In this document: piece by piece, positions 423 through 61,752 of the stretch
Layout of the letters: every line of letters begins with the position of its first letter
Numbering within the stretch: the first letter of the stretch is position 1
Source: Gracilinanus agilis
Lineage: Eukaryota
Assembly (NCBI RefSeq): GCF_016433145.1
Contig: NC_058136.1
Span: forward strand, 33,129,345 to 33,193,344
Direction of reading: 5' to 3'
DNA length: 64,000 nucleotides
Translations under genes and position numbers: made by a program
Notes under the pieces: generated by a model
Database searches by the model: none
Seen by the model: the letters and a program-made list of their open reading frames with translations, nothing else
Told to the model about the DNA's origin: nothing

Positions 423-511
423 CGAATCTCCCACGAACATGACTCAGGTCAAAGAGATTGTGGACCGCCTGCTGAAGGGCTACGATGTCCGTCTCAGACC
501 CGATTTTGGAG
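423..511 (+). CDS. GABRB4: GABA-A beta-4-type subunit exon 2 (89 nt)
   Basis: cttctttttttcAG|C GAA TCT CCC ACG AAC ATG ... GAT TTT GGA G|GTAAGC; encodes [29 protein letters not shown], the alpha-1 helix and YD.RLRP motif. Confidence 0.95.

Positions 512-61752: not shown

What the first reader, a model, noticed from the sequence alone, without database searches (positions are those of the whole stretch)
423..61752. Intact beta-4-type GABA-A subunit in a marsupial: an ancestral-state counterpart of eutherian theta
Seen: an intact exon 2-9 frame with beta-4 signatures and a classic beta TM2 ([23 protein letters not shown]). Established: beta-4 is known from birds and fish; eutherian theta (GABRQ, in the X-linked alpha3/epsilon cluster) is regarded as its fast-evolved positional orthologue and has a very different TM2 and loop. 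Inference: this mammal keeps a true beta-like fourth beta subunit, so the conversion to theta would post-date the marsupial-eutherian split, and marsupial brains could have a receptor class eutherians lack. This is the strongest biological signal in the window. It may already be visible in gene trees, but I know of no functional characterisation.
Basis: partly seen in the sequence, partly recalled or inferred. Interest (0 to 1): 0.7.

Follow-up and report, generated by a model that had tools for sequence, protein, structure and literature searches.

The report
Opossum beta-4-type GABA receptor gene
The window holds exons 2 to 9 of an intact GABA-A receptor beta-4-type subunit gene of a mouse opossum, already in public annotation, which shows that marsupials keep a normal fourth beta subunit where placental mammals have the odd theta subunit.

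Summary
Eight exons on the + strand (423-61752) all have AG/GT borders and beta-type sizes. Joined, they give 456 codons and one terminal stop. The N gap lies inside intron 4 and touches no coding sequence.

The joined model is 456/456 identical to RefSeq XP_044538554.1, "GABA receptor subunit beta-4-like" of Gracilinanus agilis, so the gene is already annotated. Orthologues are annotated in 12 marsupials, mostly as "theta", and in both monotremes.

Trees place the protein inside the gnathostome beta-4 clade, apart from beta-1 to beta-3. All GABA-site and pore residues match beta-3. dN/dS against the Tasmanian devil is 0.105, and 0.037 in the ligand-binding and TM1-3 part.

The protein is not a frozen ancestral state:
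- The TM3-TM4 loop is only 34% identical to platypus beta-4, whereas platypus and chicken share 86%.
- The opossum lineage carries 83 unique changes against 4 in platypus.

Three things could not be tested: eutherian theta in the tree, neighbouring genes, and transcription.

Verdict: a real gene, a sound first reading, low novelty.

The parts
423..511 (+). exon 2 (89 nt; start of the mature N-terminus, ends in ...RLRPDFG/G)
   Evidence: AG acceptor and GT donor; identical to P0321; devil orthologous exon has the same length, 92% nt identity
26064..26131 (+). exon 3 (68 nt; beta-1 strand of the ligand-binding domain)
   Evidence: AG/GT; beta-4-type motif shared with platypus; devil exon has the same length
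31854..31970 (+). candidate cassette exon (117 nt, 39 codons, in frame between exons 3 and 4); not in this genome's RefSeq model
   Evidence: AG acceptor with a pyrimidine tract and GT donor; 39/39 aa identical to the insert of Monodelphis isoform X1; the same insert is annotated in 9 marsupials
47673..47893 (+). exon 4 (221 nt; loops D and A of the GABA site)
   Evidence: Pfam Neur_chan_LBD E 3e-16; human beta-3 E 2e-41; 95% identical to platypus beta-4
54305..54436 (.). assembly gap (132 N) inside intron 4; not coding
   Evidence: lies between exon 4 and exon 5, whose junction is continuous in the protein
55080..55162 (+). exon 5 (83 nt; Cys loop)
   Evidence: Pfam LBD; 100% identical to platypus beta-4; both Cys-loop cysteines present
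56503..56640 (+). exon 6 (138 nt; loops B end, F and C)
   Evidence: AG/GT; E155, Y157, T160, F200 and T202 equivalents kept
59509..59661 (+). exon 7 (153 nt; loop C end, TM1, start of TM2)
   Evidence: Pfam Neur_chan_memb; 98% identical to platypus beta-4
60688..60941 (+). exon 8 (254 nt; TM2, TM3, first part of the intracellular loop)
   Evidence: Pfam E 4e-24; human beta-3 E 1e-35; N265, H267 and M286 equivalents kept
61387..61752 (+). exon 9 (366 nt with TAA; rest of the intracellular loop, RRRS site, TM4, stop)
   Evidence: collinear in frame with human beta-3 and with platypus and chicken beta-4; loop dN/dS 0.25, TM4 0.03

Best explanation
The window carries exons 2-9 of the single X-cluster 'fourth beta' gene of the mouse opossum Gracilinanus agilis (RefSeq 'beta-4-like'; called GABRQ/theta in other marsupials). 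It encodes a working beta-type subunit of pentameric GABA-A chloride channels. Its extracellular domain offers the principal (+) face of the GABA site to an alpha subunit. Its TM2 lines a canonical beta pore, with the asparagine at the position that makes beta-2 and beta-3 sensitive to etomidate and loreclezole. Its intracellular loop keeps the basic RRRS phosphorylation and adaptor patch. Shown here: gene structure, beta-4 clade membership, conservation of all tested functional residues, and purifying selection among marsupials. Inferred: that it assembles and gates like chicken or zebrafish beta-4, that it is the positional orthologue of eutherian theta, and that it is expressed in brain. 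Relative to other beta-4 proteins, the ligand-binding and membrane core is almost unchanged. The intracellular loop was heavily rewritten by ordinary substitutions and small indels on the marsupial or therian stem, and has been conserved since.
For: Structure and frame. Family: Pfam and solved beta-1/2/3 structures. Identity: 456/456 to XP_044538554.1 and 99.3% to Monodelphis 'theta X2'. Best non-marsupial matches are platypus beta-4 (76.3%) and chicken beta-4 (75.6%), against mammalian beta-3 at 70.8%. Trees: marsupial clade 100/1.0, amniote beta-4 100/1.0, gnathostome beta-4 100/0.986 (IQ-TREE quick PMSF SH-aLRT; FastTree). Residues Y62, Q64, Y97, E155, Y157, T160, F200, T202, Y205, R207, both Cys-loop cysteines, L9', N265, H267 and M286 are all as in beta-3. 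Selection against the devil: dN/dS 0.105 overall, 0.037 from the N-terminus to TM3, 0.248 in the loop, 0.028 in TM4. The devil gene has the same eight exon lengths and the same splice sites. Region identities are and the relative-rate test. Orthologues are annotated intact in 12 marsupials and 2 monotremes. Zebrafish beta-4 forms GABA-gated channels with alpha and gamma-2 (PMC7973766).
Against: There is no direct evidence of transcription. Exon 1 was not seen. Orthology to eutherian theta rests on public names, on the size of the records and on the literature, not on a tree or neighbours made here. The rewritten loop and six changes in TM4 could have altered partners or trafficking, so 'ordinary beta' may be too simple. 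The careful bootstrap tree never finished, so support values are SH-aLRT and SH-like only.
Confidence: 0.85

Rival explanations
1. The gene is one of the ordinary mammalian beta genes (GABRB1, 2 or 3), or a recent copy of one, and not a beta-4/theta locus.
For: TM2-TM3 is nearly identical to human beta-3. The loop starts with the VDAHGN motif of beta-1 to beta-3, where other beta-4 proteins have VDPYGN.
Against: Both trees put it inside beta-4 with high support, apart from beta-3, beta-2 and beta-1. The ligand-binding domain is 92% identical to platypus beta-4 and 80% to mammalian beta-3. The top hits are all beta-4. The beta-4-specific motifs of exons 3-4 are identical to platypus.
Confidence: 0.01
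2. The gene is a decaying or silent relic: the frame is open but it is no longer used.
For: Transcription was not shown. The lineage is strongly accelerated. Eutherian theta and epsilon are known as fast-evolving genes (PMC1975676).
Against: dN/dS is 0.105 overall and 0.037 over 308 core codons at dS 0.19-0.24. All eight exons keep the same lengths and splice sites in the devil. Intact orthologues exist in 12 marsupial species of five orders. All functional residues are kept.
Confidence: 0.03
3. The subunit is functional but no longer a plain beta. The rewritten intracellular loop and TM4 already give it theta-like, modulatory or differently targeted behaviour, so marsupials stand part-way to theta rather than at the ancestral state.
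For: The loop is 34% identical to any beta-4, against 74-86% among fish, chicken and platypus. There are 63 unique loop changes against 2 in platypus, and 6 against 0 in TM4. The new loop is itself conserved among marsupials (85-87% identity, dN/dS 0.25). A conserved in-frame cassette exon would insert 39 residues between the first two strands of the ligand-binding domain.
Against: The GABA site, the pore and the RRRS patch are those of a beta subunit. The loop has the normal beta length (118 residues) and stays collinear with beta-4 landmarks. Nothing here shows any similarity to the theta loop, because theta could not be retrieved.
Confidence: 0.15

Closest known systems
Vertebrate GABA-A receptor beta-4 subunit (GABRB4: chicken, reptiles, amphibians, fishes, platypus)
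   Same: Same clade in the trees. Ligand-binding domain 92% and TM1-TM3 97% identical to platypus and chicken beta-4. Same beta-type exon sizes as the devil orthologue. Same GABA-site and pore residues.
   Different: The TM3-TM4 loop is 34% identical (other beta-4 proteins share 74-86%) and TM4 is 80% identical (others 93-100%). Nine positions outside the loop are invariant in other sarcopterygian beta-4 proteins but changed in all marsupials. The lineage rate is about 20 times that of platypus.
Eutherian GABA-A receptor theta subunit (GABRQ, Xq28 cluster with GABRA3 and GABRE)
   Same: The literature regards theta as derived from beta-4 by position and exon structure (PMC1975676). NCBI gives the marsupial orthologues the name theta. 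The records carrying the marsupial gene have the size of marsupial X chromosomes (inference).
   Different: Mouse theta is reported as 31.3% identical to zebrafish beta-4 (PMC5922542). This protein is 73% identical to carp beta-4. It has a beta-type TM2 and a loop of normal length. From my own knowledge, theta has a divergent TM2 and a much longer loop. No theta sequence was compared here.
Human GABA-A receptor beta-3 subunit (GABRB3; solved structures such as 4COF and 6HUG)
   Same: Best solved-structure match. 18 of the 19 tested binding-site, Cys-loop, pore, TM3 and loop residues are identical; the exception is the second serine of the RRRSS pair.
   Different: A paralogue: overall identity is 70.8%, the ligand-binding domain 80% and the loop 36%. 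The second serine of the RRRSS pair is proline here.

Membership tests
Cys-loop (pentameric) ligand-gated ion channel subunit | Extracellular ligand-binding domain with the 13-residue-spaced cysteine pair, followed by four transmembrane segments | tested here: met
   Pfam Neur_chan_LBD and Neur_chan_memb in the exon pieces. Both Cys-loop cysteines are present. TM1-TM4 align with the solved beta subunits.
GABA-A receptor beta class | Principal-face GABA-binding residues of loops A, B and C (Y97, E155, Y157, T160, F200, T202, Y205, R207 in beta-3 numbering) | tested here: met
   All are identical to beta-3 and to platypus, chicken and carp beta-4.
GABA-A receptor beta class | Beta-type TM2/TM3 (9' leucine, 15' asparagine or serine, 17' histidine, TM3 methionine) | tested here: met
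   L, N, H and M are present. Exon 8 is nearly identical to human beta-3 through TM2-TM3.
GABA-A receptor beta class | Nine-exon gene with internal exons of 68, 221, 83, 138 and 153 nt | tested here: met
   Exon sizes; the same sizes in the devil gene. That these are the sizes of GABRB genes is from my own knowledge.
Beta-4 orthology group (GABRB4) | Groups with chicken, reptile, amphibian and fish beta-4 to the exclusion of beta-1, 2 and 3 in a tree | tested here: met
   SH-aLRT 100 and SH-like 0.986 for the beta-4 clade; 100/1.0 for amniote beta-4 including the window. The bootstrap run was not finished.
Beta-4 orthology group (GABRB4) | Conserved beta-4 intracellular loop (74-86% identical from fish to platypus) | tested here: not met
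   34-36% identity to any beta-4 loop. It is collinear and in frame, so it diverged and was not replaced.
Eutherian theta (GABRQ) orthologue | Lies beside GABRA3 and GABRE (or gamma-4) in the X-linked cluster | not testable with these tools
   Only 10 kb flanks can be fetched and they hold no other called gene. The record sizes of 60-103 Mb fit marsupial X chromosomes (inference).
Eutherian theta (GABRQ) orthologue | Sister to, or nested with, eutherian theta in a gene tree | not tested
   No eutherian theta could be retrieved. In every word search it ranks below thousands of beta-1 to beta-3 clusters and only 120 rows are listed. The big search returned no theta representative.
Eutherian theta (GABRQ) orthologue | Theta-type sequence state (strong divergence from beta subunits) | tested here: not met
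   73% identical to carp beta-4, against 31.3% reported for mouse theta and zebrafish beta-4.
Functional GABA-A subunit | Transcribed and correctly spliced in brain; gives GABA-gated current with partners | not testable with these tools
No run is on record as RNA. No spliced fragment was found. Constraint is indirect support only.

The most novel reading that the evidence does not exclude
Theta arose in steps. Monotremes keep an almost frozen beta-4. On the therian (or marsupial) stem the intracellular loop and TM4 were rewritten while the GABA site and pore stayed beta-4. Only eutherians went on to remodel the binding domain and pore into theta. Marsupials and monotremes would then have a fourth canonical, probably X-linked, beta subunit with the N265-type anaesthetic site, a receptor class absent from eutherian brains. 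The statement in current papers that beta-4 is not found in mammals would be wrong.
Probability: 0.45. Interest if true: 0.5.

Novelty: already known. Interest (0 to 1): 0.3.

Why it matters
The gene itself is not new. This exact protein is in RefSeq as 'beta-4-like', and its orthologues are annotated in 12 marsupials and both monotremes. What has not reached the papers I could search is the consequence. Three of them treat theta as mammal-specific, or say that beta-4 is absent from mammals or has no clear mammalian orthologue (PMC1975676, PMC5922542, PMC7973766). Public names are inconsistent: platypus 'beta-4' and echidna 'theta' sit in one 90% cluster, and Gracilinanus 'beta-4-like' and Monodelphis 'theta' are 99.3% identical. 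The marsupial and monotreme proteins give graded intermediates between beta-4 and theta. These could date and dissect the positive-selection episode claimed for theta, and separate loop changes from binding-site and pore changes. The practical points are modest: opossum neuropharmacology may include a fourth beta subunit, and orthology tables for GABRQ and GABRB4 need one name.

Tried and rejected
1. An alignment of a full-length fish beta-3 with the window's exon pieces, meant as a profile query. MAFFT misplaced the short pieces and the idea was dropped.
2. The big representative search with exon 9 returned only odd isoforms and fragments at 53% identity or less, and no theta. Its one useful product was a fish beta-4 fragment, which opened the word searches.
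3. Eutherian theta could not be reached by any word search. It ranks below thousands of beta-1 to beta-3 clusters, and no query long enough to use the length filter was available.
4. The careful IQ-TREE and a plain LG+G bootstrap run did not finish in time (one search failed on the thread count). The quick PMSF tree and FastTree are reported instead.
5. A frameshift origin of the divergent loop is rejected. The annotated frame is collinear with platypus and chicken beta-4, and the other frames give nothing.
6. GC-biased rewriting of the loop is rejected. GC3 is 0.61 in the loop against 0.62-0.67 elsewhere, and chicken is similar.
7. Genomic DNA could not be fetched for koala X2 (not on record), platypus (range too long), or Gracilinanus and Monodelphis (files too large). 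Codon analysis is therefore limited to window against devil.
One later local script used the whole window file as the subject of a tblastn with a 39-residue query.
9. A word search with exon 9 for short spliced fragments from sequencing-run assemblies found no marsupial hit.
10. Rfam found no family in the window. Pfam on the long non-exon ORFs gave only a sub-threshold L1 ORF1 trace.
11. The earlier-findings index holds nothing on this locus or its neighbours.
12. The joined exon model was never sent to a database search. Exons were searched one by one by reference. The joined form was used only in local scripts, until the identical stored protein P0321 was found.

Full report
**What is in the window**

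Six-frame motif scans and direct reading give eight + strand exons:

| Exon | Coordinates | Length (nt) |
|---|---|---|
| 2 | 423-511 | 89 |
| 3 | 26064-26131 | 68 |
| 4 | 47673-47893 | 221 |
| 5 | 55080-55162 | 83 |
| 6 | 56503-56640 | 138 |
| 7 | 59509-59661 | 153 |
| 8 | 60688-60941 | 254 |
| 9 | 61387-61752 | 366 |

- Every acceptor is AG and every donor is GT.
- Joined in a local script, the exons give 456 codons and one terminal TAA.
- The quoted TM2 motif spans the exon 7/8 junction.
- Exon 1 is absent from the first 422 bases. The annotated gene range of 64.7 kb places it about 3.4 kb left of exon 2.
- The only N run, 54305-54436, lies in intron 4, 643 nt before exon 5. The exon 4 to exon 5 junction is continuous in the protein, and the devil orthologue has no exon in between. 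The gap does not bear on the frame. I did not fill it or look it up.

**How the spliced model was searched**

- The joined model was never sent to a database tool. It was built only inside local scripts from the window file, for comparison with proteins the tools had returned.
- From then on, the stored protein P0321, which is identical to the model, could stand for it.

**Family**

- Pfam finds Neur_chan_LBD in exons 4 and 5 and Neur_chan_memb in exons 7, 8 and 9.
- The best solved structures are human beta-3, beta-1 and beta-2: E 2e-41 for exon 4, 1e-35 for exon 8 and 2e-23 for exon 9. Alpha, gamma, delta, pi and rho subunits lie far behind.

**Finding comparators**

- The single big search, run with exon 9, returned only unusual 50% cluster representatives at 53% identity or less.
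- One of them, P0047, is a fish beta-4 fragment. Used as a word-search query, it brought beta-4 proteins of fishes, coelacanth, lungfish, amphibians, squamates, chicken and platypus.
- A second search used platypus beta-4 restricted to residues 27-336. It brought marsupial proteins that NCBI names 'theta' and UniProt names 'beta4'.
- The cluster look-up lists orthologues in 12 marsupials and both monotremes:
  - Named 'theta': Monodelphis, Sarcophilus, Antechinus, Sminthopsis, Dromiciops, Trichosurus, Petaurus, Notamacropus, Phascolarctos, Macrotis.
  - Named 'beta4': Vombatus.
  - Named 'beta-4-like': Gracilinanus agilis.
  - Platypus ('beta-4') and echidna ('theta') sit in one 90% cluster.
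- My model is 456/456 identical to residues 11-466 of the Gracilinanus protein XP_044538554.1, and 99.3% identical to Monodelphis theta X2.
- The window is therefore Gracilinanus agilis (GCA_016433145.1, an 82.25 Mb record). The gene, with just this exon structure, is already annotated.

**Placement**

- By blastp, the model's best non-marsupial matches are platypus beta-4 (76.3%), Anolis (76.6%), chicken (75.6%) and carp (73.0%). Mammalian beta-3 is at 70.8%.
- I built a 44-row tree (IQ-TREE, LG+C20 PMSF, quick search, SH-aLRT) and a 39-row FastTree. Both agree:

| Clade containing the window | IQ-TREE SH-aLRT | FastTree SH-like |
|---|---|---|
| Marsupial | 100 | 1.0 |
| Amniote beta-4 | 100 | 1.0 |
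| Gnathostome beta-4 | 100 | 0.986 |

- Beta-3, beta-2 and beta-1 fall outside the beta-4 clade.
- Rows left out of the second tree were the partial or low-quality beta-1 and beta-2 rows with long branches.
- The careful bootstrap searches did not finish.

**Function inferred from sequence**

- The following residues are all as in beta-3 and in platypus, chicken and carp beta-4 (beta-3 numbering):
  - Y62, Q64, Y97, E155, Y157, T160, F200, T202, Y205 and R207;
  - the two Cys-loop cysteines;
  - the 9' leucine, N265, H267 and M286.
- The basic RRRS patch before TM4 is kept. The second serine of the beta-3 pair is proline in the two didelphids, and serine in devil and Dromiciops.
- These features predict a subunit that supplies the principal face of the GABA site and a normal beta pore.
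- Zebrafish beta-4 gives GABA currents with alpha and gamma-2 (PMC7973766). No functional work on a marsupial or monotreme subunit turned up in four literature searches.

**Selection**

- The Tasmanian devil locus (L002) has the same eight exon lengths and splice sites.
- Nei-Gojobori estimates, window against devil:

| Region | Codons | dN/dS | Other values |
|---|---|---|---|
| All of exons 2-9 | 456 | 0.105 | dN 0.025, dS 0.241 |
| N-terminus to TM3 | 308 | 0.037 | |
| TM3-TM4 loop | 118 | 0.248 | |
| TM4 | 30 | 0.028 | |

- This is a constrained gene, not a relic.

- Percent identity by region:

| Pair | Ligand-binding domain | TM1-TM3 | Loop | TM4 |
|---|---|---|---|---|
| Window vs platypus beta-4 | 92 | 97 | 34 | 80 |
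| Platypus vs chicken | 96 | 100 | 86 | 100 |
| Platypus vs carp | 87 | 99 | 77 | 93 |
| Window vs devil | 98 | 99 | 85 | 97 |

- Tajima's relative-rate test, window against platypus with chicken as outgroup:

| Region | Unique to window | Unique to platypus | p |
|---|---|---|---|
| All | 83 | 4 | 2.5e-17 |
| Core (binding domain + TM1-3) | 14 | 2 | 0.003 |
| Loop | 63 | 2 | 3.8e-14 |
| TM4 | 6 | 0 | 0.014 |

- The marsupial stem branch is 0.35-0.5 substitutions per site, against 0.02-0.03 for chicken and platypus.
- So the intracellular loop, which beta-4 had held almost fixed since before the split of ray-finned fishes and tetrapods, was rewritten on the marsupial or therian stem and has been conserved since.
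- The rewriting was not a frameshift. The annotated frame stays collinear with beta-4 landmarks.
- There is no sign of GC-biased change. GC3 in the loop is 0.61, as elsewhere in the gene.
- The near-ancestral mammalian state is the monotreme one. The marsupial protein is a beta-4 core with a derived loop.

**Relation to eutherian theta**

- The literature holds that theta derives from beta-4, on the basis of chromosomal location, exon structure and trees (PMC1975676).
- It also reports that mouse theta is only 31.3% identical to zebrafish beta-4 (PMC5922542). The opossum protein is 73% identical to carp beta-4.
- NCBI's naming of the marsupial genes as theta is annotation, not a test.
- All chromosome-scale records with the gene are 60-103 Mb. 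The exception is the bilby record of 705 Mb. From my own knowledge, this is the size class of marsupial X chromosomes, and the bilby has an X-autosome fusion. This fits X linkage, but it is an inference.
- I could not put eutherian theta in the tree and could not see neighbouring genes.
- That the large conversion of the binding domain and pore post-dates the marsupial-eutherian split is therefore well supported on the marsupial side. Its link to theta rests on others' work.
- Whether the loop change is shared with theta is open.

**Transcription was not tested**

- No listed run is on record as RNA. One run, probably the assembly's own sample, holds 0.98 of the sampled words. Twenty-three runs of two coded organisms hold 0.08-0.14.
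Nothing from those places was sent to a search tool afterwards.
- A word search for short spliced fragments found none from marsupials. By the tool's own terms this says little.

**Verdict**

- The added value here has three parts:
  - the quantitative picture of an ancestral core, a rewritten loop and a twenty-fold rate excess over platypus;
  - the note that published statements of 'no beta-4 in mammals' are out of date;
  - a conserved in-frame cassette exon, seen in passing.

Noticed in passing
window 31854-31970 (+), inside intron 3: A 117-nt open exon-like segment with a pyrimidine tract, AG acceptor and GT donor, in frame between exons 3 and 4. It is 39/39 aa identical to the insert of Monodelphis 'theta isoform X1'. 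The same 39-40 residue insert is annotated in 9 marsupials. It is nearly invariant among Australidelphians but only 22/39 identical between them and the didelphids. Window-to-devil nucleotide identity (74-86%) is no higher than in the flanking intron. It would add 39 residues between the first two strands of the ligand-binding domain, next to the gating interface. It is not in this genome's RefSeq model.
   Followed up: partly
P0222/P0335 and P0321/P0325: Public names are inconsistent for one gene. Platypus 'beta-4' and echidna 'theta' are in the same 90% cluster. Gracilinanus 'beta-4-like' and Monodelphis 'theta' are 99.3% identical. UniProt calls the wombat protein 'beta4', and one amphisbaenian beta-4 is called 'theta'.
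   Followed up: yes
window 61600-61640 (exon 9); P0284, P0285, P0290: The phosphorylation and adaptor patch before TM4 varies among marsupials at the second serine of the beta-3 RRRSS pair. It reads RRRSP in Gracilinanus, Monodelphis and tammar, RRRSS in devil and Dromiciops, and RRRTP in koala.
   Followed up: no
window 56704-56842 and ORFs 56340-57083 (-), 56526-57038 (+): A CT-rich tandem or low-complexity stretch in intron 6 (period 72, 1.9 copies) creates long spurious open frames on both strands, 247 and 170 aa. There is no Pfam match.
   Followed up: yes
window 3513-3701 (-): A short ORF with a sub-threshold match to the L1 ORF1 dsRBD-like domain (E 0.007). It is probably a LINE-1 fragment in intron 2. 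RT-like short ORFs at 36398-36580 (-) and 38841-39083 (-) gave no Pfam match.
   Followed up: partly
window 61387-63400; runs X1-X23: Twenty-three runs of two coded organisms, guessed to be RNA, each hold the same small share (0.08-0.14) of the sampled words of exon 9 plus the 3' flank. This could be exon 9 of a close relative's transcript, or a shared repeat.
   Followed up: no
L001 and L002: Two assemblies (GCA_048593225.1 and GCA_902635505.1) carry exactly the same 520-residue devil 'theta X1' product, on records of 99.5 and 83.1 Mb. Which organism the first assembly belongs to was not established.
   Followed up: no
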